Positions 7,186-58,330 of a DNA stretch of 64,000 nucleotides are shown piece after piece. Every line of letters begins with the position of its first letter. Within the stretch, counting starts at the first letter, position 1. The notes below the pieces were generated by a model. It searched no databases. It was given only the letters and a program-made list of their open reading frames with translations, and was not told where the DNA came from. This DNA comes from Dendrobates tinctorius (lineage: Eukaryota), in the NCBI RefSeq assembly GCF_039654945.1, contig NW_027361867.1:124001-188000 (forward strand), read 5' to 3'. Made by a program: the position numbers and the translations under genes.

Positions 7186-7970
7186 ACCACAACCTGCTAC
7201 AGAAAATAAGGACCCCCAGTCAGTATGGAGGAACTTACAGTCCACCACAACCCCTTACTCAGTATAATGGCCCGTACCAGCCACACATTCAGTATGAGAG
7301 TCCCAACAGCTCTTCTCTTCATATTAAGCCTCCAGAATTCCTGATTTTAAAAAAACACACACTACTCACCCAACCCCGTTCCCGAGGTGACCTGCTCCAG
7401 TCTGTGCGGTGTGAGTACTGAGGCTCCATACTACAGGTGTGATGTAGTGACGCCATTGTGCCTGCAGTGCACGGAGTCTCAGACTCACAGGTGAAGGCTG
7501 AATGGGGGAGCAGGAGCTTTTGACTCCCTGACTCACTATTCTATTCAATGGTATCACTGTCATGGGAGTGTGGATATCTCTGAAATTGTGATGATGGGAA
7601 GGAGAGGGTGACCAATACCAAACCCCACGAGCCCTCTCAATGTATGGGCGTCATAGCAACCGAGTGGGCTACCTTTATGGATGATACACTCCTGCCTATC
7701 CAACTACTGTATGGTAAATATCTCATAGATCCTGGGTTCATTAGTATCTGCACCAAGAATGAGGCGAAGTGAGTATATGATAATTAGCTGTAAGGTTGTC
7801 GGTGGGGTAGATGGTACCATCTTGTGCATGTAGGGGGCAATACTGTGGGAACATTAGAAAGTGGGGGGATGGCAGTACTGTGGGAACAATATACTGTGTG
7901 TATGGCAAGCTGCTCTTGTGGGAACATTTTAATTTTACTATGTAGGGGGATGGCGGTACTTTCGGAGCAT

Positions 7971-10900
7971 TATACTGTGTGTGGTGGGATGGTGATACTG
8001 TGAGAAGATTATACTGTGTGTGGTGGGATGGTGATACTGTGAGAAGATTATACTGTGTGTGGTGGGATGGTGATACTGTGAGAAGATTATACTGTGTGTG
8101 ATGAGATGGTGATACTGTGAGAAGATTATACTGTGTGTGGTGGGATGGTGATACTGTGAGAAGATTATACTGTGTGTGGTGGGATGGTGATACTGTGAGA
8201 TTATACTGTGTGTGGTGAGATGGTGATACTGTGAGAAGATTATACTGTGTGTGGTGGGATGGTGGTACTGTGAGAAGATTATACTGTGTGTGGTGGGATG
8301 GTGGTACTGTGAGAAGATTATACTGTGTGTGGTGGGATGGTGGTACTGTGAGAAGATTATACTGTGTGTGGGGGGATGGTGATACTGTGAGAAGATTATA
8401 CTGTGTGTGGTGGGATGGTGGTACTGTGAGAAGATTATACTGTGTGTGGTGGGATGGTGATACTGTGAGATTATACTGTGTGTGGTGGGATGGTGGTACT
8501 GTGAGAAGATTATACTGTGTGTGATGAGATGGTGATACTGTGAGAAGATTATACTGTGTGTGGTGGGATGGTGATACTGTGAGAAGATTATACTGTGTGT
8601 GATGAGATGGTGATACTGTGAGAAGATTATACTGTGTGTGGTGGGATGGTGATACTGTGAGAAGATTATACTGTGTGTGGTGGGATGGTGATACTGTGAG
8701 AAGATTATACTGTGTGTGATGAGATGGTGATACTGTGAGAAGATTATACTGTGTGTGGTGGGATGGTGATACTGTGAGAGGATTATACTGTGTGTGGTGG
8801 GATGGTGATACTGTGAGAAGATTATACTGTGTGTGGTGGGATGGTGATACTGTGAGAAGATTATACTGTGTGTGGTGGGATGGTGGTACTGTGAGAAGAT
8901 TATACTGTGTGTGGTGGGATGGTGATACTGTGAGAAGATTATACTGTGTGTGATGAGATGGTGATACTGTGAGAAGATTATACTGTGTGTGGTGGGATGG
9001 TGATACTGTGAGAAGATTATACTGTGTGTGGTGGGATGGTGATACTGTGAGAAGATTATACTGTGTGTGATGAGATGGTGATAGTGTGAGAAGATTATAC
9101 TGTGTGTGGTGGGATGGTGATACTGTGAGAAGATTATACTGTGTGTGGTGGGATGGTGATACTGTGAGAAGATTATACTGTGTGTGGTGGGATGGTGGTA
9201 CTGTGAGAAGATTATACTGTGTGTGGTGGGATGGTGATACTGTGAGATTATACTGTGTGTGGTGGGATGGTGGTACTGTGAGAAGATTATACTGTGTGTG
9301 ATGAGATGGTGATACTGTGAGAAGATTATACTGTGTGTGGTGGGATGGTGATACTGTGAGAAGATTATACTGTGTGTGGTGAGATGGTGATACTGTGAGA
9401 AGATTATACTGTGTGTGGTGGGAAGGTGATACTGTGAGATTATACTGTGTGTCGTGGGATGGTGGTACTGTGAGAAGATTATACTGTGTGTGGTGGGATG
9501 GTGATACTGTGAGAAGATTATACTGTGTGTGGTGAGATGGTGATACTGTGAGAAGATTATACTGTGTGTGGTGGGATGGTGATACTGTGAGAAGATTATA
9601 CTGTGTGTGGTGAGATGGTGATACTGTGAGAAGATTATACTGTGTGTGGTGGGATGGTGGTACTGTGAGATTATACTGTGTGTGGGGGGATGGTGATACT
9701 GTGAGAAGATTATACTGTGTGTGGTGGGATGGTGGTACTGTGAGATTATACTGTGTGTGGTGGGATGGTGGTACTGTGAGAAGATTATACTGTGTGTGGT
9801 GGGATGGTGATACTGTGAGAAGATTATACTGTGTGTGGTGGGATGGTGATACTGTGAGAAGATTATACTGTGTGTGGTGGAATGGTGATACTGTGAGAAG
9901 ATTATACTGTGTGTGATGAGATGGTGATACTGTGAGAAGATTATACTGTGTGTGGTGGGATGGTGATACTGTGAGAAGATTATACTGTGTGTGGTGGGAT
10001 GGTGATACTGTGAGAAGATTATACTGTGTGTGATGAGATGGTGATACTGTGAGATTATACTGTGTGTGGTGGGATGGTGATACTGTGAGAAGATTATACT
10101 GTGTGTGGTGGGATGGTGATACTGTGAGAAGATTATACTGTGTGTGATGAGATGGTGATACTGTGAGAAGATTATACTGTGTGTGGTGGGATGGTGATAC
10201 TGTGAGAAGATTATACTGTGTGTGGTGAGATGGTGATACTGTGAGAAGATTATACTGTGTGTGGTGGGAAGGTGATACTGTGAGAAGATTATACTGTGTG
10301 TCGTGGGATGGTGGTACTGTGAGAAGATTATACTGTGTGTGGTGGGATGGTGATACTGTGAGAAGATTATACTGTGTGTGGTGAGATGGTGATACTGTGA
10401 GAAGATTATACTGTGTGTGGTGGGATGGTGATACTGTGAGAAGATTATACTGTGTGTGGTGAGATGGTGATACTGTGAGAAGATTATACTGTGTGTGGTG
10501 GGATGGTGGTACTGTGAGATTATACTGTGTGTGGGGGGATGGTGATACTGTGAGAAGATTATACTGTGTGTGGTGGGATGGTGGTACTGTGAGATTATAC
10601 TGTATGTGGTGGGATGGTGGTACTGTGAGAAGATTATACTGTATGTGGTGGGATGGTGGTACTGTGAGAAGATTATACTGTGTGTGGTGGGATGGTGGTA
10701 CTGTGAGAAGATTATACTGTGTGTGGTGGGATGGTGATACTGTGAGATTATACTGTGTGTGGGGGGATGGTGATACTGTGAGAAGATTATACTGTGTGTG
10801 GTGGGATGGTGATACTGTGAGAAGATTATACTGTGTGTGGGGGTATGGTGATACGGTGAGAAGATTATACTGTGTGTGGTGGGATGGTGATACTGTGAGA

Positions 10901-12130
10901 AGATTATACTGTGTGTGGTGGGATGGTGATACTGTGAGAAGATTATACTGTGTGTGGTGGGATGGTGATACTGTGAGAAGATTATACTGTGTGTGGTGGG
11001 ATGGTGGTACTGTGAGAAGATTATACTGTGTGTGGTGGGATGGTGGTACTGTGAGAAGATTATACTGTGTGTGGTGGGATGGTGATACTGTGAGAAGATT
11101 ATACTGTGTGTGGGAGGATGGTGATACTGTGAGAAGATTATACTGTGTGTGGTGGGATGGTGGTACTGTGAGAAGATTATACTGTGTGTGGTGGGATGGT
11201 GATGCTGTGAGATTATACTGTGTGTGGTGGGATGGTGATACTGTGAGAAGATTATACTGTGTGTGGTGGGATGGTGATGCTGTGAGAAGATTATACTGTG
11301 TGTGGTGGGATGGTGATACTGTGAGAAGATTATACTGTGTGTGGTGGGATGGTGATGCTGTGAGATTATAGTGTGTGTGGTGGGATGGTGATACTGAGAG
11401 ATTATACTGTGTGTGGTGGGATGGTGATATTGTGAGAAGATTATACTGTGTGTGGTGGGATGGTGATACTGTGAGAAGATTATACTGTTTGTGGTGGGAT
11501 GGTGATGCTGTGAGAAGATTATACTGTGTGTGGTGGGATGGTGATACTGTGAGAAGATTATACTGTGTGGTGGGATGGTGATACTGTGAGAAGATTATAC
11601 TGTGTGTGATGGGATGGTGGTACTGTGAGAAGATTATACTGTGTGTGGTGGGATGGTGATATTGTGAGAAGATTATACTGTGTGTGGTGGGATGGTGATA
11701 CTGTGAGAAGATTATACTGTGTGGTGAGATGGTGGTACTGTGAGTAGATTATACTGTGTGTGGTGGGATGGTGGTACTGTGAGATTATACTGTGTGTGGT
11801 GGGATGATGATACTGTGAGAAGATTATACTGTGTGTGATGGGATGGTGGTACTGTGAGAAGATTATACTGTGTGTGGTGGGATGGTGATACTGTGAGAGG
11901 ATTATACTGTGTGTGGTGGGATGGTGGTACTGTGAGAAGATTATACTGTGTGTGGTGGGATGGTGATGCTGTGAGAAGATTATACTGTGTGTGGTGGGAT
12001 GGTGATGCTGTGAGAAGATTATACTGTGTGTGGTGGGACTGTGAGAAGATTATACTGTGTGTGGTGGGACTGTGAGAAGATTATACTGTGTGTGGTGGGA
12101 TGGTGATACTGTGAGAAGATTATACTGTGT
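7971..12130. repeat. 39-bp minisatellite, about 105-110 copies
   Basis: Unit TACTGTGTGTGGTGGGATGGTGATACTGTGAGAAGATTA, with 36-bp variants. Degenerate precursor units at ~7800-7970. Confidence 0.98.
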
Positions 12131-12639
12131 GAGCGGCATCATATATATTGCATAAGGAGTGTCATAAGAAAAAATCCTCAGGGCTGTGCGGCATTTGTAC
12201 ATAGACTGCCATCTGCCGTCCAGACGGGACCATGTGGAATCAATGGGAAGAGGGAGAGTTTCAGGGAGGAAGAGACCTGGTGCACCATCTAGACAGGTGA
12301 CCTTGATGACGCAGCTTCCTGTTATTATAAAGGCCATAGCCCCAAAGGAAAGGGGTGCGGGGAGGAATCTGAGGAACCGGCCATGGTAAAGTGCCGAGGC
12401 AGCTGGGTGTGGGGCAGAACCCTGCTTACAGGGGCATAATGGGGGCATTACACTGTGTGGGGCCAAGAAAGGGACCCTGTACTATGAGAACACTCCGTCT
12501 CCTCACTGCCTGTCTTCCATAGTGGGGTCGTATGTATCTATTACAGGAAACAGAAACGTGATGATTCTTATAAAGAGTCTCAGTGCAGAAGGGGTTAATG
12601 TCCCCCGCGCTCAGTAATGGGGAATCTCCACATCCCTCC

Positions 12640-12731
12640 ACCTGCAGAGCCGCACTCCACATATATGGCTCCTCTGTGCACAGGACCTGTGATGAGGTCA
12701 CAGGAGGTGAGGAGTCAGGGGTCACATGATC
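12640..12731. repeat. Interspersed ~92-bp repeat; inverted partner at 16227-16317
   Basis: ACCTGCAGAGCCGCACTCCACATATATGGCT...GGTCACATGATC versus its reverse complement at 16227-16317. Confidence 0.85.
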
Positions 12732-13016
12732 TCCGGAGTGCAGACCTCCACGGAGCCTTCTCCTCAGTCAGTGACATTCCCGCCATTATTTGCCCCTCAC
12801 TACTGGCACAATTACCCCGCGCCGCCTTCTCTACACAGTGTTATGTGTGGAATGTAACGTGTGATTTCTCTGGAGGGAAAAAGACCCCACACGAGGGAAT
12901 TATTGCCAGTTACCGGCCGTCTACTATATGGCGGCATATGATTGTGCTATCGACTCCACACAAGGAGCTAAAATGCCCAAATCTCGGTTATTTCCCCCCT
13001 TCCCGAGTCCGGCTGA

Positions 13017-13203
13017 GGCCGGGGTGAGACATGAGAGAAACTCGCACGAGGCGCACACCTCAATCCCCGGCAATGCCGCCGGCCCTCGGACCACAGCACA
13101 TAGAAATCCATGGAGCTAAATGCTCCGGTCCCGAGTGCCGGCGGCAGTGCCGGGTATTGAGGTGTGCGCCTCGTGCGAGTTTCTCTCATGTCTGACCCCG
13201 ACC
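13017..13203. mobile_element. Palindromic Harbinger/Tourist-type MITE
   Basis: GGCCGGGGTGAGACATGAGAGAAACTCGCACGAGG...CCTCGTGCGAGTTTCTCTCATGTCTGACCCCGACC. Relatives at 37846-37990 and ~62120-62235. Confidence 0.75.
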
Positions 13204-13349
13204 TATATGTGATTATATGCTAATGTCAGAATTTATATGTGTGAAGGACGACCCAACCCGGTGCCGTATTTGGCAGTGATGCTGCCCGAGGCGCTGTGAG
13301 TGGTCGCTCCCCCTATTGGGAAGTCAGACAACAGTCTCCTGCAGCCGTC

Positions 13350-13810
13350 AGTGTCACACGGACAAATTCTATCGGGAGTTTTCACACCTACAGGACACCA
13401 TTATAGTCTATGAGGCCACATGGATGTGATTTCTCACTGTGCGCCTGGGCAAAACTTACAGAGATTTCTCCGTTTTTTTACAGTACAACAAAAGTGCTAA
13501 TACAAGTCTATGGGTCCAGAAAACCCATCACATGGGTAGTATTAGTATACAGCGTGTGCGCCATCCGTGTGCTGCCTGTGATTAACACTGCAAAGTATAA
13601 CAGAGGCGCCATCATTTATTTATCCAGCTGTGAAAACCACTGACGATAACTGATGGTAAAAACGGGCACACGGACCGTACACGGATGATGCGCGGACTGT
13701 ACACTGATGGCAGACGGACCGTGCACTGATGACTCGCGGACCGTACACTGATGACGCACGGACCGGACACTGGTGACATTGGCACCATCTTACACGTACG
13801 TGGTTATACA
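13350..13810. mobile_element. Degraded Harbinger-type MITE with CACGGACCGTACAC repeats
   Basis: Repeated ACGGACCGT/CACTGATG motifs and an ending ...ACACGTACGTG; termini decayed. Confidence 0.5.
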
Positions 13811-14721
13811 CAGCTGAGTGACAGATGCTGGTAAGAGCCGTTCCCATTACAGAGTAGTTACTGTCCCCATACACATTAGACTACGGTCAGCCACACCGGC
13901 AGATCTCAGCGCGCTCGGCGACACTCTGACCCCTAGATTAGCACACCGTGTGTCACTATCTGAGAGAAGCCACTGATTGTTCTCTCACGGGTCATCCACG
14001 TTGTTACATTGTTTCTCTCCAGTTTTGTGTCACTGACGAGGCGTCACTTCACCCAATACAAAACCCTCGGAAGGTCACGGGTTATTCAAGGTCATCACTG
14101 AGAAACAAATGCCATCAATTCACTATTACTGAGAGACGCCGGATACATGGGACCGGCCTGTGACCCCAGGTAGGAAATCACATGTGTAAGGGCACGGGGT
14201 CGCTCTCTGGTACCAGGGAACCGTCACAGCGTGAATACAGACTTCTAAGTCTGAGCGCCCCTTTATGGTATTGGCGGGATGTTTGGGCTCGCTGTACAAT
14301 CTGGAGCCAGACGCCTCCTTGGTCATCACCTGCCTGAGCTAGGTGTATCCAGCCAAAAATGATGGAGGACCGCGCAGAGGCCGACTCTGCCCCATTATAG
14401 TCACTGACCCCATCAGCCACATCACTGACCGCTGCTCGAGGAGTCAGATCTAAGCCCGACAGCCCCGAATGCACAGAACAGCCTGTCACTCACACACTGC
14501 ACGAGCAACATGTCCGACCACTGAGCGACAGACAGGATAAGATTGTGTACGGAGGCCACGACTTTACCACTGATGACCGATCCGTATCCTTAGGATGGGT
14601 GATCAATGTCTGATCAGTGCAACACCGCCACTCCCATCACTCACCTGTCACTGGCAGCTGGAACTGCACACACCCTGCACCCCTCCATCTCCCGCACCCT
14701 GCACCCCTGTCCCCTGCAGCC

Positions 14722-16042
14722 TCCTGCTCCCCTCTATCACACACCCCCTGCACCCTCCTGCTCCCCTCTATCACACACCCCCTGCACCCTCTCGCTCCCC
14801 TCTATCACACACCCCCCTGCGCCCTCTCGCTCCCCTCTATCACACACCCCCCTGCGCCCTCTCGCTCCCCTCTATCACACACCCCCTGCGCCCTCTCGCT
14901 CCCCTCTATCACACACCCCCTGCGCCCTCTCGCTCCCCTCTATCACACACCCCCTGCGCCCTCTCGCTCCCCTCTATCACACACCCCCTGCGCCCTCTCG
15001 CTCCCCTCTATCACACACCCCCTGCGCCCTCTCGCTCCCCTCTATCACACACCCCCTGCGCCCTCTCGCTCCCCTCTATCACACACCCCCTGCGCCCTCT
15101 CGCTCCCCTCTATCACACACCCCCTGCGCCCTCTCGCTCCCCTCTATCACACACCCCCTGCGCCCTCTCGCTCCCCTCTATCACACACCCCCTGCGCCCT
15201 CTCGCTCCCCTCTATCACACACCCCCTGCGCCCTCTCGCTCCCCTCTATCACACACCCCCTGCGCCCTCTCGCTCCCCTCTATCACACACCCCCTGCGCC
15301 CTCTCGCTCCCCTCTATCACACACCCCCTGCGCCCTCTCGCTCCCCTCTATCACACACCCCCTGCGCCCTCTCGCTCCCCTCTATCACACACCCCCTGCG
15401 CCCTCCCGCTCCCCTCTATCACACACCCCCTGCGCCCTCTCGCTCCCCTCTATCACACACCCCCTGCGCCCTCCCGCTCCCCTCTATCACACACCCCCTG
15501 CACCCTCCCGCTCCCCTCTATCACACAGCCCCCTGCACCCTCTCGCTCCCCTCTATCACACGCCCCCTGCGCCCTCTCGCTCCCCTCTATCACACACCCC
15601 CTGCGCCCTCTCGCTCCCCTCTATCACACGCCCCCTGCGCCCTCTCGCTCCCCTCTATCACACACCCCCTGCGCCCTCTCGCTCCCCTCTATCACACGCC
15701 CCCTGCGCCCTCTCGCTCCCCTCTATCACACACCCCCTGCGCCCTCTCGCTCCCCTCTATCACACACCCCCTGCGCCCTCTCGCTCCCCTCTATCACACA
15801 CCCCCTGCGCCCTCTCGCTCCCCTCTATCACACACCCCCTGCGCCCTCCCGCTCCCCTCTATCACACACCCCCTGCACCCTCTCGCTCCCCTCTATCACA
15901 CAGCCCCCTGCGCCCTCTCGCTCCCCTCTATCACACACCCCCTGCGCCCTCTCGCTCCCCTCTATCACACACCCCCTGCACCCTCCTGCTCCCCTCTATC
16001 ACACACCCCCTGCACCCTCTCGCTCCCCTCTATCTCACCCCC
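14722..16042. repeat. 34-bp C-rich minisatellite, about 39 copies
   Basis: Unit CACACACCCCCTGCGCCCTCTCGCTCCCCTCTAT; the opposite strand carries several G3-G5 runs per unit. Confidence 0.98.
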
Positions 16043-16354
16043 TGTCCTCCCCATGTTCCCTCCATTACCTCTCACAAGTTTCCTATCTCCTGCAGCTTCC
16101 AGCATGCTAACTCTCTGGCTCCTCCCCTTGTGGACGTAATCGTGACGTCACCGCAGGTCCTGTACCATCCAGTCACATGTCATGTCTTCTGGTTAGGCGG
16201 GGATGTGGCAGACAGTGAGGCCCCTGATCATGTGACCGCTGACTCCTCCCCTCCTGTGACCTCATCACAGGTCCTGTGCACAGAGCAGCCATATATGTGG
16301 AGTGCGGCTCTGCAGGTTAGTGATGGGCAGTCCGGCTCCTTTCCCCACTTTTCT

Positions 16355-19300
16355 CCCTCCTGTCCCTTCACTATAAAGCCTGAGCCTCATTATACAGCTG
16401 TACAGGGGTCTAGTGAAGGCTTTTTAGCCCTTTCCTCAGACTGTAGCTCCTGGGAACAGACCCTCACTCCTGTCCCTTCACTATAAAGCCTGGGCCTCAT
16501 TATACAGCTGTACAGGGGTCTAGTGAAGGCTTTTTAGCTCTTTCCTCGGACTGTAGCTCCTGGGAACAGGCCCTCACTCCTGTCCCTTCACTATAAAGCC
16601 TGGGCCTCATTACACAGCTGTACAGGGGTCTAGTGAAGGCTTTTTAGCCCTTTCCTCAGACTGTAGCTCCTGGGAACAGGCCCTCACTCCTGTCCCTTCA
16701 CTATAAAGCCTGGGCCTCATTATACAGCTGTACAGGGGTCTAGTGAAGGCTTTTTAGCCCTTTCCTCAGACTGTAGCTCCTGGGCACAGGCCTTCACTCC
16801 TGTCCCTTCACTATAAAGCCTGGGCCTCATTATACAGCTGTACAGGGGTCTAGTGAAGGCTTTTTAGCCCTTTCCTCAGACTGTAGCTCCTGGGAACAGA
16901 CCCTCACTCCTGTCCCTTCACTATAAAGCCTGGGCCTCATTATACAGCTGTACAGGGGTCTAGTGAAGGCTTTTTAGCCCTTTCCTCAGACTGTAGCTCC
17001 TGGGAACAGACCCTCACTCCTGTCCCTTCACTATAAAGCCTGGGCCTCATTATACAGCTGTACAGGGGTCTAGTGAAGGCTTTTTAGCCCTTTCCTCAGA
17101 CTGTAGCTCCTGGGATCAGGCCCTCACTCCTGTCCCTTCATTATAAAGCCTGGGCCTCATTATACAGCTGTACAGGGGTCTAGTGAAGGCTTTTTAGCCC
17201 TTTCCTCAGACTGTAGCTCCTGGGAACAGACCCTCACTCCTGTCCCTTCACTATAAAGCCTGGGCCTCATTATACAGCTGTACAGGGGTCTAGTGAAGAC
17301 TTTTTTGCCCTTTCCTCAGACTGTAGCTCCTGGGAACAGGCCCTCACTACTGTCCCTTCACTATAAAGCCTGGGCCTCATTATACAGCTGTACAGGGGTC
17401 TAGTGAAGGCTTTTTAGCCCTTTCCTCAGACAGTAGCTCCTGGGAACAGGCCCTCACTCCTGTCCCTTCACTATAAAGCCTGGGCCTCATTATACAGCTG
17501 TACAGGGGTCTAGTGAAGGCTTTTTAGCCCTTTCCTCAGACTGTAGCTCCTGGGCACAGGCCCTCACTCCTGTCCCTTCACTACAAAGCCTGGGCCTCAT
17601 TATACAGCTGTACAGGGGTCTAGTGAAGGCTTTTTAGCCCTTTCCTCAGACTGTAGCTCCTGGGATCAGGCCCTCACTCCTGTCCCTTCATTATAAAGCC
17701 TGGGCCTCATTATACAGCTGTACAGGGGTCTAGTGAAGGCTTTTTAGCCCTTTCCTCAGACTGTAGCTCCTGGGCACAGGCCCTCACTCCTGTCCCTTCA
17801 CTATAAAGCCTGGGCCTCATTATACAGCTGTACAGGGGTCTAGTGAAGGCTTTTAGCCCTTTCCTCAGACTGTAGCTCCTGTGCACAGGCCCTCACTCCA
17901 GTCCCTTCACTATAAAGCCTGGCCTCATTATACAGCTGTACTGGGGTCTAGTGAAGGCTTTTTAGCCCTTTCCTCAGACTGTAGCACCTGGGAACAGGCC
18001 CTCACTCCTGTCCCTTCACTATAAAGCCTGGGCCTCATTATACAGCTGTACAGGGGTTTAGTGAAGGCTTTTTAGCTCTTTCCTCAGACTGTAGCTCCTG
18101 GGATCAGGCCCTCACTCCTGTCCCTTCACTATAAAGCCTGGGCCTCATTATACAGCTGTACAGGGGTCTAGTGAAGGCTTTTTAGCCCTTTCCTCAGAAT
18201 GTAGCTCCTGGGCACAGGCCCTCACTCCAGTCCCTTCACTATAAAGCCTGGGTCTCATTATACAGCTGTACAGGGGTCTAGTGAAGGCTTTTTAGCCCTT
18301 TCCTCATACTGTAGCTCCTGGGAACAGGCCCTCACTCCTGTCCCTTCACTATAAAGCCTGGGCCTCATTATACAGCTGTACAGGGGTCTAGTGAAGGATT
18401 TTTAGCCCTTTCCTCAGACTGTAGCTCCTGGGAACAGACCCTCACTCCTGTCCCTTCACTATAAAGCCTGGGTCTCATTATACAGCTGTACAGGGGTCTA
18501 GTGAAGGCTTTTTAGCCCTTTCCTCAGACTGTAGCTCCTGGGAACAGACCCTCACTCCTGTCCCTTCACTATAAAGCCTGGGTCTCATTATACAGCTGTA
18601 CAGGGGTCTAGTGAAGGCTTTTTTGCCCTTTCCTCAGACTGTAGCTCCTGGGAACAGGCCCTCACTCCTGTCCCTTCACTATAAAGCCTGGGCCTCATTA
18701 TACAGCTGTACAGGGGTCTAGTGAAGGCTTTTTAGCCCTTTCCTCAGACTGTAGCTCCTGGGATCAGGCCCTCACTCCTGTCCCTTCATTATAAAGCCTG
18801 GGCCTCATTATACAGCTGTACAGGGGTCTAGTGAAGGCTTTTTAGCCCTTTCCTCAGACTGTAGCTCCTGGGAACAGGCCCTCACTACTGTCCCTTCACT
18901 ATAAAGCCTGGGCCTCATTATACAGCTGTACAGGGGTCTAGTGAAGGCTTTTTAGCCCTTTCCTCTGACTGTAGCTCCTGGGCACAGGCCCTCACTCCTG
19001 TCCCTTCACTATAAAGCCTGGGCCTCATTATACAGCTGTACAGGGGTCTAGTGAAGGCTTTTTTGCCCTTTCCTCAGACTGTAGCTCCTGGGAACAGGCC
19101 CTCACTACTGTCCCTTCACTATAAAGCCTGGGCCTCATTATACAGCTGTACAGGGGTCTAGTGAAGGCTTTTTAGCCCTTTCCTCAGACTGTAGCTCCTG
19201 GGAACAGACCCTCACTCCTGTCCCTTCACTATAAAGCCTGGGCCTCATTATACAGCTGTACAGGGGTCTAGTGAAGGCTTTTTTGCCCTTTCCTCAGACT

Positions 19301-21564
19301 GTAGCTCCTGGGAACAGGCCCTCACTACTGTCCCTTCACTATAAAGCCTGGGCCTCATTATACAGCTGTACAGGGGTCTAGTGAAAGCTTTTTAGCCCTT
19401 TCCTCAGACTGTAGCTCCTGGGAACAGACCCTCACTCCTGTCCCTTCACTATAAAGCCTGGGTCTCATTATACAATTGTACAGGGGTCTAGTGAAGGCTT
19501 TTTTGCCCTTTCCTCAGACTGTAGCTCCTGGGAACAGGCCCTCACTCCTGTCCCTTCACTATAAAGCCTGGGCCTCATTATACAGCTGTACAGGGGTCTA
19601 GTGAAGGCTTTTTAGCCCTTTCCTCAGACTGTAGCTCCTGGGATCAGGCCCTCACTCCTGTCCCTTCATTATAAAGCCTGGGCCTCATTATACAGCTGTA
19701 CAGGGGTCTAGTGAAGGCTTTTTAGCCCTTTCCTCAGACTGTAGCTCCTGGGCACAGGCCCTCACTCCTGTCCCTTCACTATAAAGCCTGGGCCTCATTA
19801 TACAGCTGTACAGGGGTCTAGTGAAGGCTTTTAGCCCTTTCCTCAGACTGTAGCACCTTGGAACAGGCCCTCACTCCTGTCCCTTCACTATAAAGCCTGG
19901 GCCTCATTATACAGCTGTACAGGGGTTTAGTGAAGGCTTTTTAGCTCTTTCCTCAGACTGTAGCTCCTGGGATCAGGCCCTCACTCCTGTCCCTTCACTA
20001 TAAAGACTGGGCCTCATTATACAGCTGTACAGGGGTCTAGTGAAGGCTTTTTAGCCCTTTCCTCAGAATGTAGCTCCTGGGCACAGGCCCTCACTCCAGT
20101 CCCTTCACTATAAAGCCTGGGTCTCATTATACAGCTGTACAGGGGTCTAGTGAAGGCTTTTTAGCCCTTTCCTCAGACTGTAGCTCCTGGTATCAGGCCC
20201 TCACTCCTGTCCCTTCACTATAAAGCCTGGGCCTTATTATACAGCTGTACAGGGGTCTAGTGAAGGCTTTTTAGCCCTTTCCTCATACTGTAGCTCCTGG
20301 GAACAGGCCCTCACTCCTGTCCCTTCACTATAAAGCCTGGGCCTCATTATACAGCTGTACAGGGGTCTAGTGAAGGATTTTTAGCCCTTTCCTCAGACTG
20401 TAGCTCCTGGGCACAGGCCCTCACTCCTGCCCTTCACTATAAAGCCTGGGCCTCATTATACAGCTGTACAGGGGTCTAGTGAAGGCTTTTTAGCCCTTTC
20501 CTCAGACTGTAGCTCCTGGGATAAGGCCCTCACTCCTGTCCCTTCACTATAAAGGCTTGGCCTCATTATACAGCTGTACAGGGGTTTAGTGAAGGCTTTT
20601 TAGCTCTTTCCTCAGACTGTAGCTCCTGGGATCAGGCCCTCACTCCTGTCCCTTCACTATAAAGCCTGGGCCTCATTATACAGCTGTACAGGGGTCTAGT
20701 GAAGGCTTTTTAGCCCTTTCCTCAGAATGTAGCTCCTGGGCACAGGCCCTCACTCCAGTCCCTTCACTATAAAGCCTGGGTCTCATTATACAGCTGTACA
20801 GGGGTCTAGTGAAGGCTTTTTAGCCCTTTCCTCATTCTGTAGCTCCTGGGAACAGACCCTCACTCCTGTCCCTTCACTATAAAGCCTGGGCCTCATTATA
20901 CAGCTGTACAGGGGTCTAGTGAAGGCTTTTTAGCCCTTTCCTCATTCTGTAGCTCCTGGGAACAGGCCCTCACTCCTGCCCTTCACTATAAAGCCTGGGC
21001 CTCATTATACAGCTGTACAGGGGTCTAGTGAAGGCTTTTTAACCCTTTCTTCAGACTGTAGCTCCTGGGATCAGGCCCTCACTCCTGTCCCTTCACTATA
21101 AAGCCTGGGCCTCATTATACAGCTGTACAGGGGTTTAGTGAAGGCTTTTTAGCTCTTTCCTCAGACTGTAGCTCCTGGGATCAGGCCCTCACTCCTGTCC
21201 CTTCACTATAAAGCCTGGGCCTCATTATACAGCTGTACAGGGGTCTAGTGAAGGCTTTTTAGCTCTTTCCTCAGACTGTAGCTCCTGGGAACAGGCCCTC
21301 ACTCCTGTCCCTTCACTATAAAGCCTGGGCCTCATTATACAGCTGTACAGGGGTCTAGTGAAGGCTTTTTAGCCCTTTCCTCAGACTGTAGCTCCTGGGA
21401 ACAGCCCCTCACTCCTGTCCCTTCACTATAAAGCCTGGGCCTCATTATACAGCTGTACAGGGGTCTAGTGAAGGCTTTTTAGGCCTTTCCTCAGACTGTA
21501 GCTCCTGGGAACAGGCCCTCACTCCTGTCCCTTCACTATAAAGCCTGGGCCTCATTATACAGCT
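16355..21564. repeat. 110-bp satellite, about 47 copies
   Basis: Period 110 (CTGTAGCTCC at 16441 and 16551). A final partial unit resumes at 22641-22666, after the hAT insertion. Confidence 0.98.
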
Positions 21565-22640
21565 TAGTGATGGGTAAAATGTGATTTTTTTGGTGAGCCG
21601 GTTCTTTTGGATCGGCACACCAAAAAAAGACGGCTCTATTGGCTCCAAAAACGGCTCTTCATTTCATATTACCTTTGGCTTTCAAATTGAAGCCAAATTC
21701 TGGTATGTGTTAACCCATGATTGTATACCTTTTAGTAAAAATCTACACGTGCCAATTTATGACATAAAACAGAATAGTTTCCAGAATAACCAGATTTTAT
21801 ATTATTTGCTGTAAAAACTTTAACAAACACAAAATGAACATGCAAAATAGCAACAAGATCCTAATTATCAGTGCCACATTTTAAAGCTACCTTCACACTT
21901 GGCAAGTTCGCTGTGGGCTGTCTGCTGCAAACAGTCTGCAGCAAAACTGCAGTGTCACATGTCGCATCTGCATCCAGGCGGATTTAGATAAGGAATTTGT
22001 GCCGTTGTGGGTCGGGCGGTGACAGCACGGAGCTGTGCGATCGGTCCCCGGAGGTCAATCACGGAGTTCTGTGCGCATGTCATGCGTGCGCACAGAACTG
22101 CCTGTCGCATCTCCGGCCCCGCCCCCTGAGGCAGGGGCATAAGAGAAAATGCAGCGCTGGAGCCGGGAAAGGTAAGAATTGAGCCTACCCCTTTAAACCT
22201 GATAATTTCCAAAATAACATTTTGTGTATTCTGTTTAGTATGAAAATATTAACAAATATAAAATGTGCAAAAATATAACAAATGCTCAAAACAGCAGCAG
22301 AAAACCATTTTTAAAAGTGCAACATGTTAACTGTGTGTGTGTTAACTTAAAAACAATCACAAGAGGGCAAGGAATGCTTGTCACAGATTGGAGGGGGGCG
22401 GGGCTGTGAGTCAGTGCTATGTGTGGCAGCAGGAGGAGCATGCATTCTTTCTCAGTCTCCTGGATAAGATCAGAGTGACTACTGCCGGGAGGGGCGGGGC
22501 AAGAGGGGACTGACTGTGGAACGTGAACTGGCAAAGAGCCGTTTAAATTTCAATTGGCTCCATGCCAGGAGCCGGCTCATATGATTCACTATAAAGAGCT
22601 GGCTCTTAGAGCCGGCTCCTTCGGGAGCTACCCATCACTA
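21565..22640. mobile_element. Non-autonomous hAT element (1076 bp) inserted in the last satellite unit
   Basis: 12-bp TIR TAGTGATGGGTA / TACCCATCACTA; perfect 8-bp TSD ATACAGCT (21557-21564 and 22641-22648); subterminal GAGCC/GGCTC repeats. Confidence 0.93.
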
Positions 22641-22699
22641 ATACAGCTGTACAGGGGTCTAGTGAATGTTTTTTGAATATTTAAAAAAAAATGAACATC

Positions 22700-25600
22700 T
22701 AACTTTTTTTCATAAAAAAAATACTTCAGGTTCAATTTTTTTTATTTTACCAAGGGTAACAGGAGAAATTGAACTGCAAAAGTTATTGTGCAATTTGTCC
22801 TGAGTACGCAGATACCTGATTTGTGGGGGGGAACGACTGTTTCGGGAGCATGGCAGAGCTCAGAATGGAAGGAGCGCCGTTTGACTTTTTCAAAGCAAAA
22901 TTGGCTGGAATTCAGATCGGACGCCATGTCACGTTTGGAGAGTCCCTGATGTACCTAAACAGTGGAAACCCCCTACAAGTGACCCCATTTTGGAAACTAG
23001 ACCCCCCAAGGAACTTATCTAGATATGTGGTGAGAACTTTGAACCCACAAGGGCTTTACAGAAGTTTATAACGTACAGCGGTACAATTAAAAAATCATAT
23101 TTTTTCCACAAAAATGATCTTTTCACCCCAATTTTTATTTTCCAAGGGTAACAGGACCCTAAAAGTTATTGTGCAATTTGTCCTGAGTATGCTGATACCC
23201 CACATGTGGGGGTAAACCACTATTTGGGAGCATGGCAGAGCTCGGAAGGGAAGCAGCGCCATTTGACGTTTTTGGCTGGAATTGAGATCGGACATCATGT
23301 CGCGATTGGAAAACCCCTGATGTACCAAAACAGTGGAAACCCCCCACAAATGACACCATTTTGGAAACTAGACCCCCTAAGGAACTTATCTAGATGTGTG
23401 GTGAGAACTTTGAACCCCCAAGTGCTTCACAGAAGTTTATAACATAAAGCCGTACAATTAAAAAATCATATTTGTTCCACAAAAATGATCTTTTCACCCT
23501 CAATTCTTATTTTTCCAAGGGTAACAGCACCCTAAAAGTTATTGTGCAATTTGTCCTGAGTACGCTGATACCCCACATGTGGGGGTAAACCACTATTTGG
23601 GCGCATGGCAGAGCTCGGAAGGGAAGCAGCGCCATTTGACGTTTTTGGCTGGAATTGAGATCGGACATCATGTCGCGATTGGAAAACCCCTGATGTACCA
23701 AAACAGTGGAAAACCCCCACAAATGACACCATTTTGGAAACTAGACCCCCTAAGGAACTTATCTAGATGTGTGGTGAGAACTTTGAACCCCCAAGGGCTT
23801 CACAGAAGTTTATAACATAAAGCCGTACAATTAAAAAATCATATTTTTTCCACAAAAATGATCTTTTCACCCTCAATTCTTATTTTTCCAAGGGTAACAG
23901 CACCCTAAAAGTTATTGTGCAATTTGTCCTGAGTACGCTGATACCCCAAATGTGGGGGTGAACCACTATTTGGGCGCATGGCAGAGCTCGAAAGGGAAGC
24001 AGCGCCATTTGACGTTTTTGGCTGGAATTGAGATCGGACACCATGTCGCGATTGGAGAACCCCTGATGTACCTAAACAGTGGAAACCCCCCACAAATGAC
24101 ACCATTTTGAAAACTAGACCCCCTAAGGAACTTATCTAGATATGAGGTGAGCACTTTGAACCCCCAAGGGCTTCACAGAAGTTTATAATGCCAGGGCATG
24201 AAAATAAAAAAATCGTATTTTTTCCACAAACATGATCAATTAGTCCACAATTTTTTCATTTTCCCAAGGGTAACAGGAGAAATTGAACCCCAAAAGTTGT
24301 TGTCCAATTTGTCCTGAGTACGCTGACACCCCATATGTGGGAGAAAACTACTGTATGGACACACGTCAGGGCTCGGAAGGGAAGTAGTGACGTTTTGGAA
24401 TGCAGACTTTGATGGAATGGTCTGCGGGTGTCATGTTGCCTTTGGAGAGCCCCTAATGTACCTAAACAGTGGAAACACCCACAAATGACCCCATTTTGGA
24501 AACGAGAACCCCTAAGGAACTTTTCTAGATGTGTGGTGAGCACTTTGAACCCCCAAGGGCTTCACAGAAGTTTATAATGCCCGGGCATGAAAATAAAAAA
24601 ATCGTATTTTTTCCACAAACATGATCAATTAGTCCCCAATTTTTTAATTTTCCCAAGGGTAACAGGAGAAATTGGACCCCAAAAGTTGTTGTCCAATTTG
24701 TCCTGAGTACGCTGACACCCCATATGTGGGAGAAAACTACTGTATGGACACACGTCGGGGCTCGGAAGGGAAGCAGTGACGTTTTGGAATGCAGACTTTG
24801 ATGGAATGGTCTGCGGGTGTCATGTGCGTTTGGAGAGCCCCTGATGTACCTAAACTATTGAAACTCCCCACAAGTGACCCCATTTTGGACACTAGACCCC
24901 CCCACGGAACTTATCTAGATGTGTGGTGAGCACTTTGAACCCCCAAGTGCTTCACAGAAGTTTATAACGCTTGGACGTGAAAATAAAAAAAATCATTTTT
25001 TTCCACAAAAATGATATTTTTGCCCCCAATTTTTTATTTTCCTAAGGGTAACAGGAGAAATTGGACCCCAAAAATTGTTTTGCAATTTGTCCTGAGTAGG
25101 CTGATACCCTATGTGTGGGGGTAAAACACTGTTTGGGCGCATGGCAGAGGGCGCATGGCATGGAAGGGAAGGAGCACCATATGACTTTTTCAACTCAGAA
25201 TTGGCTGGAATTGAGGTCAGACGCAATGTTGCATTTGGAGAGCCCCTGATGTGCCCAAACAGTGGAAACCCCCAATTCTAACTCCAACCCGAACCCCAAC
25301 ACACCCCTAGCCCTAACCCAAGCCCTAACCCTAGCCCTAACCCTAGCCCTAATGGAAAAATGGAAATAAATACATTTTTTTTTATTTTATTATTTTTCCC
25401 TAACTAAGGGGGTGATATCGGGGGGTTTGATTTACTATTTATGGCGGGTTTTTATATTTGGCAGCTGTCACACGCTAAAAGACGCTTTTTATTGTAAAAC
25501 TAGTTTTTGCATCACCACATATTGAGAGCTATAATTTTTCCGTATTTTGACCCACCGAGTCATGTGAGGTCTTATGTTTTGCGGGACAAGTTGACGTTTT

Positions 25601-36317: not shown

Positions 36318-45811
<9,494 letters not shown>

Positions 45812-52429: not shown

Positions 52430-54850
52430 TTCAAATATTTTAAAAGCTCATACAGGTTGGGGATACATCTCAACGCGTTTCTGGCAAAAGCCCTTATTCA
52501 CTGAGATACAGATTCCTTATGATACATGGTCTAAAAACAAATGGTAACCAACCGCTGATCAATGAACACACATGTTAGCAATCAATCACATTTTGAGAAT
52601 AATTTGCATAATCAGCAAGCTAGATCCCAAGGAAAAAAAAAATCACACTCCATAATCAAACCACCGGAATTTAATCTAGATAGTGTCATTTCTATCACTC
52701 TTACCATTGGGGCATTTTGTGTCACGTCTGATGATCCAAAATCGTTCCCTTCGGAGGAGTTTTTCTTCCACTCACCGCCTCTGATAGGATTCTCCACTCT
52801 TTCTATCCCATAGAGTGAAACATTGGTTGTTCCCCCTTCTGTCTCTCTGTACAGTGTTTCCTGCTCCTGAGTAGGAGGCCTTCTTATCTCTGATGTTGGT
52901 AACATGTTCTGTGTCCTTTTCTGTAATTTACGCATTGTGCGGCCCATGGATTTCATTTTACGTTCTTTGCAGAATATACAATACACAGCATGGTTTGTGC
53001 TACAATTGATGAATCGTTTGATCTCATTGGCGGCATCAATCTTTGGCGTTTGCAGGGTATACTGACACATGGCGCATTTGGGACATGCACATTTAATAAA
53101 CCTCCGCAGCTTAGCCAAGGTTCTTTATCACTTATTGGAGGCCTGTATAGACTTGGGGAAAGAGTAGCACCTACTGACCGCCCTATTCTCGGCACACATA
53201 CTAATCCATTTTCCAGGATTTTATATAAGTCCTGACCTTGGAATAATATAGGGACATATCTATGTACAATGTTTTTATTTCCTGAAATTGGCCACTATAT
53301 GGAGAACTAAAAATGGTTTTATTTTTCATGTTATTAGTTTGTTATTACTATTTATACCGTCATCTCGAGTGTTTCTTACAAGAACTTTTGTTATTGCTGT
53401 ATCAGTTTGTTTCTTCCTGTGTCCCCATCAGTCTCGATGTCGCTGTCTCTGCTTGCTCATGGCGTAGTGTGATGTCAGAGCGGTTTCTATAGATTCTATT
53501 TAGTCCCCATAAGGGATGAATTCGCAGTGTGTGCAGGGTGGCAGCTGTCCGCTCTAAGGGTGGTGTTCCCACTGGTTTTCTATAGTTCCGATATCTGACT
53601 TTTTGTTGTTTTACATCTCCCATAAGAAACAAATCCAAGAGACTGATTTTACCCTGTGGTTCGGTATATGTAAATTTTACATTTACATCATTGGCATGGA
53701 TATAGGATACAAAATGTGGGATTTTCTCCACTTGCCCGACCCATATTAATAGAACATCATCCAGATATCTCACATATAGTTCAAGGTCAATTTTGAATGG
53801 ATTTTTGTCTGTAAAAATAATGTTTTCTTCCCACCACGATACAAAAAGTACCGCTAAAGATGGAGCGAAGCACGAGCCCATTGGGCAACCTCTGATTTGG
53901 AAGTAATATTCCTCATTGAACATAAAGTTATGCTCTAACAGATATTCAGTGCTGCGGAGAATAACTTCCTTTGTTTCATCCGTGTATCCGCTGTATTTTT
54001 GTAGGTTATGGAACACAGCAGTGCTAAATTCTGTGGAATAGATGAGAACAGGTTCACCACATCACACAGCGGGCATTTAGACTTTTCAGACCATTTTACA
54101 TCTTTCATATAATCGATTACTGATGACGGATCTTTTATAACCTGGGCTTCTGGGAATGAATGGCTGTAGATAAAAATCAAGGAAGAAATGCTGGATATAA
54201 TGGGACGCAGGGTGTAGGAAATCTAATTTATGGAAGCCCATGGAATATTGGTGTTATCGGATTATCAGGTATAATACTGCAACTTATTTTATTAGAGAAC
54301 ACCCCCATTTTCCCTCCATCTTCTACCAGTTTACCCAGGGTTTTTCTGCACGATTCTGTAGGGTCAAATTGAATCCAGGATATCATAAACCCATTTTCCA
54401 TAAAGTTTCTTATCCATAAGGACCATGCAGTCGGCTTTATCGGATTTCTTAATCACCAGGTCATCTCTTTGGGATAAGCTGGTGATTGCTTTTTTCTTAT
54501 TTTACCGAAAAGATTCCAAGGTAGAATGTATTTCAACTTTTCAGTCTTTAATTGAAAGAGATTTGATAGAACTTTCTCCAAAAAAATAAACAGAATGTAT
54601 CACTCAAAAGAAATAATCTAACCATAGAGGAAAAACACCAATATTTCATGGGCTTCCAAAAACCCATAAATTAGAATTTCCTACACCCCTGCGTCCCATT
54701 ACTTCAAGCATGTCTTCCTTGAATGAGAATTTAAGCCGATGGGTAGATTTTTATCTACAGCCATTCATTCCCAGAAGCCCAGGTTATAAAAGATCCGTCA
54801 TCAGTAATAGATTATATGAAAGATGTAAAATGGTCTGAAAAGTCTAAATT
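52430..54850 (-). mobile_element. Penelope-like element (Neptune-type: RT, Cys-rich linker, GIY-YIG), decayed, with an inverted 5' segment
   Basis: CDVVNLFSSIP, YFQIRGCPMGSCFAPSLA, RYLDDVLLIW, KCACPKCAMC and FINCSTNHAVYCIFC...GRT.R.LQKR. Segment 54636-54850 is an inverted copy of ~54076-54255. Confidence 0.88.
52466..52508 (-). ncRNA. Degenerate minimal hammerhead ribozyme in the Penelope 3' repeat
   Basis: TATCTCA-GTGAATAA-GGGC TTTT GCCA-GAAAC GCGT-TGAGATG. Stems I and II and the palindromic stem III are present; the CUGANGA box is mutated. Confidence 0.65.
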
Positions 54851-56975: not shown

Positions 56976-58330
56976 TTAAGAAAATGAAAAAGGCTTCTCC
57001 TCTGTGTGACTGCTCTGATGTCTTACAAGAAGCGCTTTCTGGTTAAAACATTTCCCACATTCTGAACATGAATAAGGTTTCTCCCCTGTGTGACTTCTTT
57101 GGTGCCTAGCCAATTCTGATTTATTGATAAAACATTTCCCACATTTTGAACAGGAAAAAGGCCTCTCTCCTGTGTGAATTCTCTGGTGACTAAAAAGATG
57201 ACATTTCTGGTTAAAAGTTTTCCCACATTCTGAACAGGAAAAAGGTTTCTCCCCTGTGTGAGTTCTTTGGTGATTAACCAATTGTGATTTCCGGTTAAAA
57301 CATTTCCCACATTCTGAACAGGAAAAAGGCTTTTCCCCTGTGTGAGTTCTCTGGTGATTAACCAATTGTGATTTCCGGTTAAAACATTTCCCACATTCTG
57401 AACATGAAAAAGGTTTCTCCCCTGTATGAGTTCTTTGGTGATTAACCAATTGTGATTTCCGGTTAAAACATTTCCCACATTCTGAACAGGAAAAAGGCTT
57501 CTCCCCTGTGTGAGTTCTCTGGTGAGTAATAAGATGCTCTTTCTTGTTAAAACATTTCCCACATTCTGAACAGGAAAAAGGCTTCTCCCCCGTGTGAGTT
57601 CTATGGTGATTAAACAAATCTGATTTCCGGTTAAAACATTTCCCACATTCTGAACAGGAAAAAGGCTTCTCCCCCGTGTGAATGCTCTGATGTCTAACAA
57701 GAATCGCTTTCCGGCTAAAACATATCCCACATTCTGAACAGGAAAAAGGCTTCTCCCCTGTGTGACTGCTCTGATGTCTAACAAGAATCGCTTTCTGACT
57801 ATAACATTTCCCACATTCTGAACAGGAAAAAGGCTTCTCCCCCGTGTGACTGCTCTGATGTCTAACAAGAATCACTTTCTGGCTAAAACATTTCCCACAT
57901 TCAGAACATGAAAAAGGCTTCTCTCCTGTGTGGATTCTCTGGTGCTTAACACATTCTGATTTACTGTTAAAACATTTCCCACATTTTGAACAGCAGAAAG
58001 GCTTCTCCCCTGTGTGAATTCTCTGGTGAGTAACAAGAGATTTCTTGTTAAAACATTTCCCACATTCTGAACATGAAAATGACTTATTTACTTTAGGAGA
58101 AGTTTGTTTTTTACTGCTTTTTTTGTGACCTTGATTTCCCTTAGTAATCAGTAATGAGTCAAGAGATGGGACCTGTTTCATAGGACCAGATGACAGATCT
58201 TTGCTGTAAATAGATGATGATATATCTGGAGTAACAGCAATCACTTCACTTGTATCTTGTAGGATCTCAAGATTATCAGATTTAAAAATTGAAGATGTCA
58301 GCTGTCCATCTGATCTCCTGTTATAGTCAT
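56976..58330 (-). CDS. Zinc-finger exon of gene B (13 C2H2 fingers; finger 1 is one residue short)
   Basis: ORF 56976-58412. Confidence 0.96.

What the first reader, a model, noticed from the sequence alone, without database searches (positions are those of the whole stretch)
16318..22666. 110-bp satellite built from hAT-TIR mimics and bracketed by real hAT ends
Seen: every unit has an inverted pair CCCTTCACTA (e.g. 16364-16373) and TAGTGAAGG (16411-16419). Each differs by one base from the TIR of the hAT at 21565-22640 (CCCATCACTA / TAGTGATGGG). The array therefore reads as ~47 copies of a 73-bp TIR-to-TIR mini-element plus a 37-bp spacer. The first unit starts with the exact TIR TAGTGATGGG (16318) followed by the hAT subterminal motif CCGGCTCCTT, and it truncates the older repeat at 16227-16317. 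The unit also shares TTCACTATAAAG with the hAT right subterminus (~22585). A true hAT with an 8-bp TSD landed in the last spacer. Inference: the satellite arose from this hAT family's ends. It could act as a ~95-site transposase sink or landing pad, or as a small-RNA or KRAB-ZFP target next to a KRAB-ZF cluster. Chance similarity of 9-10-mers is not excluded.
Basis: partly seen in the sequence, partly recalled or inferred. Interest (0 to 1): 0.72.

Follow-up and report, generated by a model that had tools for sequence, protein, structure and literature searches.

The report
Frog satellite attached to hAT transposon end
A very abundant 110-base tandem repeat of a poison-frog-like genome starts here right behind a genuine end of a hAT "cut-and-paste" transposon and was later hit by a second copy of that transposon family. 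This fits the known way transposons breed and carry satellite DNA; nothing shows that the repeat units themselves act as decoy transposon ends.

Summary
There are 47 full 110-bp units plus one interrupted unit, about 96% alike. Almost every unit has the inverted pair CCCTTCACTA / TAGTGAAGG. A 1,076-bp non-autonomous hAT (12-bp TIRs, perfect 8-bp TSD ATACAGCT) lies in phase inside the last unit. An exact copy of its TIR sits at 16318.

Three points need correction:
- 16318-16352 is a 35-bp non-satellite leader (TIR plus the family's CCGGCTC motif), not a first unit.
- The repeat at 16226-16317 is not truncated. It is one arm of a 92-bp inverted repeat, and its partner at 12640-12731 stops at the same base.
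- Beyond the 9-10-mers and one 12-mer, the monomer does not align with the hAT arms (p 0.07-0.75).

Public contigs add that the satellite is roughly 1,000 times more abundant than the hAT in organisms A and B and also far more abundant in C. Other arrays begin with the same leader, and one organism-B contig runs from hAT left-arm sequence into leader and array.

Best reading (0.55): the satellite was born in, or is carried by, a non-autonomous hAT of this family, and this copy has lost its right end. The sink, landing-pad, small-RNA and KZFP ideas have no support. This is a new member of a known kind. The scan's earlier notes report other hAT elements carrying arrays in this genome.

The parts
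16318..16352 (+). Leader, a hAT-family left end. It holds the exact 10-bp TIR (16318-16327), the CCGGCTC subterminal motif (16332-16338), and an 18-nt stretch (16335-16352) that also precedes other arrays of the satellite.
   Evidence: Loose ends and a joint, aligned (17 of 18 identical to an organism-B contig).
16353..21564 (+). 110-bp satellite array of 47.4 units, mean pairwise identity 96.1%, with no CpG. Each unit holds CCCTTCACTA, a 37-bp stretch with the palindrome TACAGCTGTA, and TAGTGAAGG.
21557..21564 (.). Left copy of the 8-bp target-site duplication ATACAGCT.
21565..22640 (+). Non-autonomous hAT element of 1,076 bp. It has 12-bp TIRs, arms rich in GGCTC/GAGCC, no ORF above 85 aa and no Pfam domain. 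It inserted in phase into unit 48.
22641..22648 (.). Right copy of the target-site duplication ATACAGCT.
22649..22668 (+). Tail of the array: the rest of unit 48, ending inside the next TAGTGAA word.
   Evidence: The break point at 22669 is shown by 19 (X1) and 22 (X14) contigs that diverge there.
22669..25149 (+). A different and even more abundant repeat that cuts the array off on the right. It continues as a 373-bp tandem repeat (22738-25149).
16226..16317 (+). Right arm of a 92-bp inverted repeat, with its partner at 12640-12731. It abuts the hAT TIR and is not truncated by it.

Best explanation
The 110-bp repeat is a major, genome-wide satellite shared by at least three related organisms. 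Its arrays sit behind a conserved leader that is the left arm of a non-autonomous hAT transposon of the TAGTGATGGG family.

The most likely history has four steps:
1. A short stretch inside or next to such an element was duplicated in tandem.
2. The array grew and was homogenised by unequal exchange.
3. Array plus leader were spread, by transposition of the carrier and/or by segmental duplication, and the satellite then far outgrew the transposon.
4. At this locus the carrier keeps its left terminus, with a shortened left arm, but has lost its right end where another abundant repeat begins at about 22669. Later a separate 1,076-bp member of the family inserted into the last unit by ordinary hAT transposition, leaving an 8-bp TSD.

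The pseudo-TIR pair in each unit may be a relic of hAT terminal sequence, but it is not shown to be one and is not shown to do anything.

Shown: the anatomy, the abundance, the shared leader and the later insertion. Inferred: birth inside the element, spread by transposition, and loss of the right end.
For: - Exact TIR at 16318, one of only three in the window. CCGGCTC follows 5 bp after it; 7 of the 9 window copies lie in hAT-family sequence. The orientation puts the array inside the element.
- Contigs of other loci start the array at the same phase, behind the same leader. X14: 17 of 18 bases identical. X1: four contigs with a more diverged version. One X14 contig joins hAT left arm (to 21660), 30 letters of leader and the array.
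- The window's leader equals the other leaders minus 9 bases that sit between two GCTC words. This is my reading.
- Summed word depth is 2e5-5.7e5 over the satellite against about 207 over the hAT in X1. The same holds in X14, and X17 has both.
- Block duplications at lags of 17-18 and 23 units show growth by unequal exchange.
- Perfect TSD and phase continuity show that the 1,076-bp element came later.
- Precedents: MITE-borne satellites in Xenopus (Xstir, miDNA4; PMC9659126) and hAT MITEs built of 167-bp tandem repeats in cod (PMC12368964).
- The scan's earlier, unchecked notes report several hAT elements with internal arrays in this genome.
Against: - No right end with a matching TSD (CTGCAGGT) was found in the window, so a complete carrier is not shown here.
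- The left flank is itself the tip of a 92-bp inverted repeat, so the locus is rearranged.
- The evidence from other loci is a handful of short contig ends of 30 letters or fewer, plus one joint at depth 7.7. I could not see whether a TIR lies upstream of those leaders.
- Monomer and hAT arms share no significant similarity beyond short words. Birth of the unit from hAT sequence is therefore not demonstrated.
- Contig depths are sums over variants and are not copy numbers.
Confidence: 0.55

Rival explanations
1. There is no kinship. The satellite arose from unrelated sequence. A relic hAT end merely lies beside this array or a few duplicated arrays, and the 9-10-mer resemblance of the unit to the TIR is chance.
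For: Local alignments of the monomer against the hAT are no better than shuffles over the full element (p 0.08-0.27) and only weakly better against the arms (p 0.01-0.04). Extension beyond the 12-mer gives p 0.07-0.09 and the interiors give p 0.09-0.75. Words of 11-13 bases shared by chance are common in this window. hAT makes up about 3.9% of the dyeing poison frog assembly, so neighbours are frequent (PMC11152451).
Against: An exact TIR plus the subterminal motif sits exactly at the array boundary and faces inward. The same leader occurs at other arrays and in a second organism, one of them continuous with hAT left-arm sequence. Only 0.55% of shuffled units hold a 10-mer within one mismatch of the TIR.
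Confidence: 0.2
2. The unit is a hAT mini-element (TAGTGAAGG to CCCTTCACTA, 73 bp) plus 37 bp of flank. It was amplified by unequal crossing-over between two related MITEs inserted 37 bp apart, or by aberrant (reversed-ends) transposition between facing ends.
For: The pseudo-TIRs have the orientation and spacing of an element. The leader plus the first 21 array bases form a 56-bp unit that runs from a true TIR to a pseudo-TIR. Array homology begins at CTCxCTCCTGT, as expected if two elements shared only their 3' parts. TIR-derived satellites are known: Xstir from the Xmix TIR and Tetris TIR-220 (PMC9659126). Tandem TE dimers as seeds of satellites are also known (PMC5932611).
Against: There is no TSD around the 73-bp unit or around the 56-bp first unit: CTGCAGGT or CAGGGGTC against TAAAGCCT. 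The unit has no subterminal GGCTC/GAGCC motif. Its interior is not significantly like the hAT arms. In other loci the leader is longer and runs on into the hAT arm rather than starting at a TIR at that distance.
Confidence: 0.15
3. This is the functional reading. The roughly 95 pseudo-ends per array bind the family's transposase (as a sink or landing pad), or the array is a small-RNA source or a KRAB zinc-finger target that silences the family.
For: One family member has landed in the array. C2H2 zinc-finger arrays lie 22-36 kb away. In listed contig variants, the pseudo-TIR words show no variant at 10% or more in three organisms, though that list is cut short.
Against: The units lack the subterminal motif that marks the arms of this family. 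In hAT elements generally, subterminal repeats are the main transposase binding sites; that is my own knowledge, not tested here. The units also carry a mismatch in the TIR word. A single insertion into a satellite that fills a sizeable share of the genome is expected by chance. The hairpin formed by the pair is no more stable than shuffles (z 0.07). There is no Rfam match. The library type of the runs guessed to be RNA is unknown.
Confidence: 0.05

Closest known systems
miDNA4 of Xenopus tropicalis, a MITE that contains and drives a satellite (Scalvenzi and Pollet 2014, as summarised in PMC9659126)
   Same: It is a frog element. A satellite unit of about the same size (119 bp by my memory of the abstract) sits inside a non-autonomous DNA transposon, either as a single copy or as an array. 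The satellite expands by unequal exchange and inflates the genome.
   Different: miDNA4 is Tc1/mariner, whereas this case is hAT (8-bp TSD, TAGTG ends). Complete TIR-array-TIR copies are documented for miDNA4. Here only the left end is seen.
gadMor-hAT-1784 / -8043 of Atlantic cod (PMC12368964)
   Same: They are hAT-derived non-autonomous elements built largely of tandem units (167-169 bp). They occur in tandem accumulations and have related subfamilies that overlap each other.
   Different: In cod the tandem units form long inverted arms of a MITE and were studied at inversion breakpoints. Here a one-directional array follows a short leader, and the satellite is about three orders of magnitude more abundant than the element.
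Xstir satellite from the Xmix MITE (Hikosaka and Kawahara 2004) and Tetris TIR-220 of Drosophila virilis (both listed in PMC9659126)
   Different: In those cases the unit aligns with the TIR region over its length. Here only 9-10-mers and one 12-mer match, and the rest is not significant.
Tandem TE dimers from double insertion (McGurk and Barbash 2018, PMC5932611)
   Same: A DNA transposon inserting into its own kind gives end-to-end junctions that can seed arrays. Here a family member sits inside an array attached to a family end.
   Different: Double insertion gives units of whole element plus TSD. Here the 37-bp stretch between pseudo-ends is far longer than a TSD and the unit is not an element.

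Membership tests
hAT superfamily, non-autonomous element (21565-22640) | 8-bp target-site duplication | tested here: met
   ATACAGCT on both sides, and the satellite unit continues in phase across the element.
hAT superfamily, non-autonomous element (21565-22640) | Short terminal inverted repeats beginning YARNG | tested here: met
   12-bp perfect TIR TAGTGATGGGTA.
hAT superfamily, non-autonomous element (21565-22640) | Short repeated motifs in both subterminal arms | tested here: met
   GGCTC/GAGCC occurs 4 times in the left 100 bp and 7 times in the right 110 bp, against 0.23 per 100 bp in the middle.
hAT superfamily, non-autonomous element (21565-22640) | No transposase of its own (this makes it non-autonomous). 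Kinship to an autonomous hAT with a DDE/hAT dimerisation domain would complete membership. | tested here: inconclusive
   The longest ORF is 85 aa and there are no Pfam hits.
Transposon-carried satellite (MITE or non-autonomous element with an internal array, as in miDNA4) | Array enclosed by both TIRs of one element, with a TSD | tested here: not met
   The left TIR is present at 16318. No right end followed by CTGCAGGT exists in the window. The array is cut off at about 22668 by another repeat.
Transposon-carried satellite (MITE or non-autonomous element with an internal array, as in miDNA4) | The same element sequence flanks independent arrays | tested here: met
   The shared leader lies directly before the same unit phase in four X1 contigs and two X14 contigs. 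One of them is continuous with the hAT left arm. The sample is small.
Transposon-carried satellite (MITE or non-autonomous element with an internal array, as in miDNA4) | Copies with one or few units dispersed with TSDs | not testable with these tools
   This needs the whole assembly.
   CAGGGGTC lies before the unit and TAAAGCCT after it. For the first unit the flanks are CTGCAGGT and TAAAGCCT.
   p 0.07-0.75 in anchored and local tests, including versions that allow for CpG decay.
Satellite DNA | Head-to-tail homogenised units at high copy number across the genome | tested here: met
   47 units at 96% identity. Thousands of contigs and a summed word depth about 1,000 times that of the hAT in two organisms, with presence in a third.

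The most novel reading that the evidence does not exclude
The pseudo-ends in every unit are true descendants of the family's TIR and are still recognised by its transposase. The satellite would then have been amplified by transposase-driven aberrant joining of facing ends (reversed-ends type duplication). It would now act as a genome-wide reservoir of hundreds of thousands of decoy ends that titrates or attracts the hAT family.
Probability: 0.06. Interest if true: 0.75.

Novelty: new member of a known kind. Interest (0 to 1): 0.32.

Why it matters
Amphibian genomes are large and full of repeats, and how satellites are born is still argued case by case. Here an apparently undescribed, very abundant satellite of poison-frog-like genomes can be tied to a specific hAT family through a conserved leader. 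That gives a concrete, testable example of a DNA transposon seeding or carrying a major satellite in a 6-Gb-class genome. It does not change the picture already drawn from Xenopus MITEs and cod hAT MITEs. For annotation it matters that such arrays should be masked together with their hAT leader, and that the TIR-like words inside the units should not be called as element ends.

Tried and rejected
1. Homology of the monomer to the 1,076-bp hAT. I tried local, anchored and CpG-decay-tolerant alignments against dinucleotide shuffles. Only short words match, so homology is rejected as not demonstrable.
2. Homology of the leader interior to the monomer. It is not significant, so I treat the leader as flank and not as a first unit.
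3. A right end for a carrier element. None has a matching TSD. Pairing 16318 with the right end at 22640 gives only 5 of 8 TSD bases and is overruled by the perfect TSD of 21565-22640.
4. A hairpin or cruciform of the inverted pair (z 0.07) and known RNA families. Nothing was found.
5. Other copies in the window of the hAT, the leader or the satellite. There are none.
6. More loci from public data. Findings search by sequence was blank. Read laying allows one call, so the array start at 16318 could not itself be laid.
7. An ORF trick to fetch arrays through predicted proteins. The unit has stops in all frames.
8. A described satellite of dendrobatid frogs in the paper library. None was found.
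Full report
**What is there.**

TRF finds one array of period 110 at 16353-21564, with 47.4 copies, 96% matches and no indels to speak of. Phasing on the word CCCTTCACTATAAAG gives 47 full units (42 of 110 bp, 5 of 109 bp). A 48th unit is interrupted at 21564, resumes at 22649 and fades at about 22668. Mean pairwise identity is 96.1%. Identical units recur at lags of 17-18 and 23 units, the mark of growth by unequal exchange of multi-unit blocks.

CCCTTCACTA is exact in 44 of 48 units and TAGTGAAGG in 45 of 48. No unit carries the exact TIR word. The unit has no CpG at all: 1 in 5.2 kb against 323 GpC, while the hAT has 32.

**The inserted element.**

21565-22640 is a 1,076-bp element with a perfect 12-bp TIR (TAGTGATGGGTA) and a perfect 8-bp duplication, ATACAGCT, at 21557-21564 and 22641-22648. 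The satellite unit continues in phase once the element and one duplication copy are removed. Its arms are dense in GGCTC/GAGCC, with 4 in the left 100 bp and 7 in the right 110 bp against 0.23 per 100 bp in the middle. Its longest ORF is 85 aa, with no Pfam hit. It is an ordinary non-autonomous hAT that landed in an existing array. The window holds no second copy.

**The left boundary.**

The exact 10-mer TAGTGATGGG occurs three times in 64 kb: at the two ends of that element and at 16318 (0.28 expected by chance). Five bases after the word at 16318 comes CCGGCTC. That motif occurs nine times in the window, six of them inside the hAT. The TIR is oriented so that the array lies on the inner side.

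From the expected counts, I estimate the chance of both words falling within 35 bp of an array edge at well under 1e-3, even allowing for hindsight. I therefore take 16318-16352 as a genuine end of this family.

It is not a first satellite unit. TRF starts the array at 16353, and the interior of the 35 bp does not align with the unit better than shuffles do.

Its partner lies at 12640-12731, at 96.7% identity. Both arms stop at the same base, so nothing is truncated. The TIR simply abuts the tip of that inverted repeat, and no target duplication is visible at that junction.

**The right boundary.**

The array ends inside a TAGTGAA word at about 22668. From 22669 onward the sequence belongs to another repeat, which continues as a 373-bp tandem array. 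In public contigs, 19 (X1) and 22 (X14) records match from 22669 rightward but carry different letters to the left. No right hAT end followed by the expected duplication CTGCAGGT exists anywhere in the window. If the array lies inside a carrier element, that element has lost its right end here.

**Evidence from other loci.**

Run names and organisms are coded. Twenty runs from ten studies hold part of 21400-22760, in organisms A to E. I laid Logan contigs of four runs on 21309-22760.

Summed word depth over the satellite is 2.0e5-5.7e5 in X1 (organism A) against about 207 over the hAT. In X14 (organism B) it is 1.7e5-3.7e5 against 10-210. In X17 (organism C) it is about 1e4-2.6e4 against 4.5. 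These sums are not copy numbers. They do show a satellite roughly three orders of magnitude more abundant than the element in organisms A and B, and both repeats present in a third organism (C). Among the listed variants at 10% or more, none falls in the two pseudo-TIR words, but the list is cut short.

The most useful rows are the loose ends.
- Four X1 contigs and one X14 contig enter the array at exactly the phase where the window's array starts (CTCACTCCTGT).
- Before that point they carry a pyrimidine-rich leader. In the X14 contig, 17 of its last 18 bases are identical to 16335-16352.
- Upstream, these leaders read GG(C/T)TCTTCTTG.
- A further X14 contig aligns to the hAT left arm up to 21660 (which ends in GGCTCTTC), then has 30 letters of the same leader, then the array from 21409.

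By my reading, the window's leader equals the others minus nine bases that sit between two GCTC words, and it has a much shorter left arm. So arrays of this satellite share a leader, and that leader is continuous with the left-arm sequence of this hAT family. The sample is small: contig ends of 30 letters or fewer, and one joint at depth 7.7. I could not lay the locus at 16318 itself because read laying allows a single call.

**Is the unit itself made of hAT ends?**

The resemblance is real but short. CCCTTCACTA matches the TIR at 9 of 10 bases. TAGTGAAGGc matches at 8 of 10. TTCACTATAAAG is shared with the right arm, 45 bp from the end.

Only 0.55% of shuffled units have a 10-mer within one mismatch of the TIR. 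A separated 9-bp inverted pair in a 110-bp unit has a chance of about 2% by my calculation. The 10% figure is inflated by short palindromes.

Against kinship:
- Local alignment of the unit with the whole element is no better than shuffles (p 0.08-0.27) and only weakly better against the arms (p 0.01-0.04).
- Extension beyond the 12-mer gives p 0.07-0.09.
- The 40 bases next to either pseudo-TIR do not resemble either arm or the leader, even when CpG decay is allowed for (p 0.09-0.75).
- Words of 11-13 bases shared by chance are common in this window.
- The supposed 73-bp mini-element has no target duplication and lacks the subterminal motif.
- Arrays begin inside it rather than at a pseudo-end.

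I conclude that derivation of the unit from the TIR is possible but not shown. His second criterion, arrays unlinked to hAT ends, is not met.

**Function.**

Nothing supports a sink, landing pad, small-RNA source or KZFP target.
- The inverted pair folds no better than shuffles (z 0.07).
- Rfam finds nothing between 12000 and 26000.
- One insertion into a satellite of this abundance is expected by chance.
- C2H2 zinc-finger arrays do lie at 44.6-45.8 kb and 57.0-58.4 kb, but their nearness is no evidence.
- In X13, a run guessed to be RNA, the satellite is only a few-fold deeper than the hAT, instead of about 1,000-fold as in X1 and X14. If that run is RNA, this would mean little transcription per copy. 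The library type is not on record.

**Comparison with what is known.**

Transposon-born or transposon-carried satellites are well documented. Examples are Xstir from the TIR region of the Xmix MITE, miDNA4 in Xenopus tropicalis and Tetris TIR-220 in Drosophila virilis (review PMC9659126). Others are hAT-derived MITEs built of 167-169-bp tandem units in Atlantic cod (PMC12368964) and tandem TE dimers as seeds of arrays (PMC5932611).

Earlier notes of this scan are unchecked by me. They name the genome as the dyeing poison frog and report several hAT elements with internal arrays in it. The genome paper gives hAT as 3.9% of that assembly and does not discuss satellites (PMC11152451). I found no described satellite of dendrobatid frogs in the held library.

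This is therefore a new member of a known kind. Its points of interest are the sheer abundance of the satellite, its presence in several species, and a leader that ties it to one hAT family.

**Limits.**

- No frog genome was searchable.
- The metagenome scan was blank.
- The window has 373 N, which I left alone.

Noticed in passing
window 12640-12731 and 16226-16317: A 92-bp inverted repeat at 96.7% identity encloses about 3.7 kb. The enclosed stretch holds a 34-bp x 39 array (14711-16042), a 22/44-bp repeat (13665-13777) and a roughly 190-bp palindrome (13016-13204). No target duplication is seen, and its right tip abuts the hAT TIR at 16318. It could be a foldback-type element or an inverted duplication.
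   Followed up: partly
window 22669-25149: A 373-bp tandem repeat of about 6 units at 88-90% identity. Its sequence has an even higher word depth in public contigs than the 110-bp satellite (about 1e6 in X1 and X14). In other copies the stretch left of 22669 reads differently, so it is truncated here.
   Followed up: partly
window 25278-25352 and 58663-58776: Short interstitial telomere-like runs: CCCTAA/CCCTAG on the + strand at 25.3 kb and degenerate TAGGGTTA-type runs at 58.7 kb. With five different arrays in 18 kb, the region looks like a repeat-rich, perhaps subtelomeric, zone.
   Followed up: no
window 7969-12131: A 39-bp minisatellite of 108 copies at 93% identity, GT-rich.
   Followed up: no
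window 16353-21564: The satellite unit has no CpG at all (1 in 5.2 kb against 323 GpC), while the inserted hAT keeps 32. This is consistent with long-standing methylation decay or with a unit that never had CpG.
   Followed up: partly
window 44585-45811 (+) and 56976-58412 (-): Two long C2H2 zinc-finger ORFs (408 and 478 aa, 8-12 fingers) lie on opposite strands. A weak reverse-transcriptase remnant lies at 53402-54016 (-).
   Followed up: partly
X13 contig ending at window 22644: A contig of another hAT copy runs past the right TIR into sequence that starts with an ACGGCTCTTTTGCC-like hAT-arm motif. This hints at family members nested in or next to each other elsewhere in the genome.
   Followed up: no
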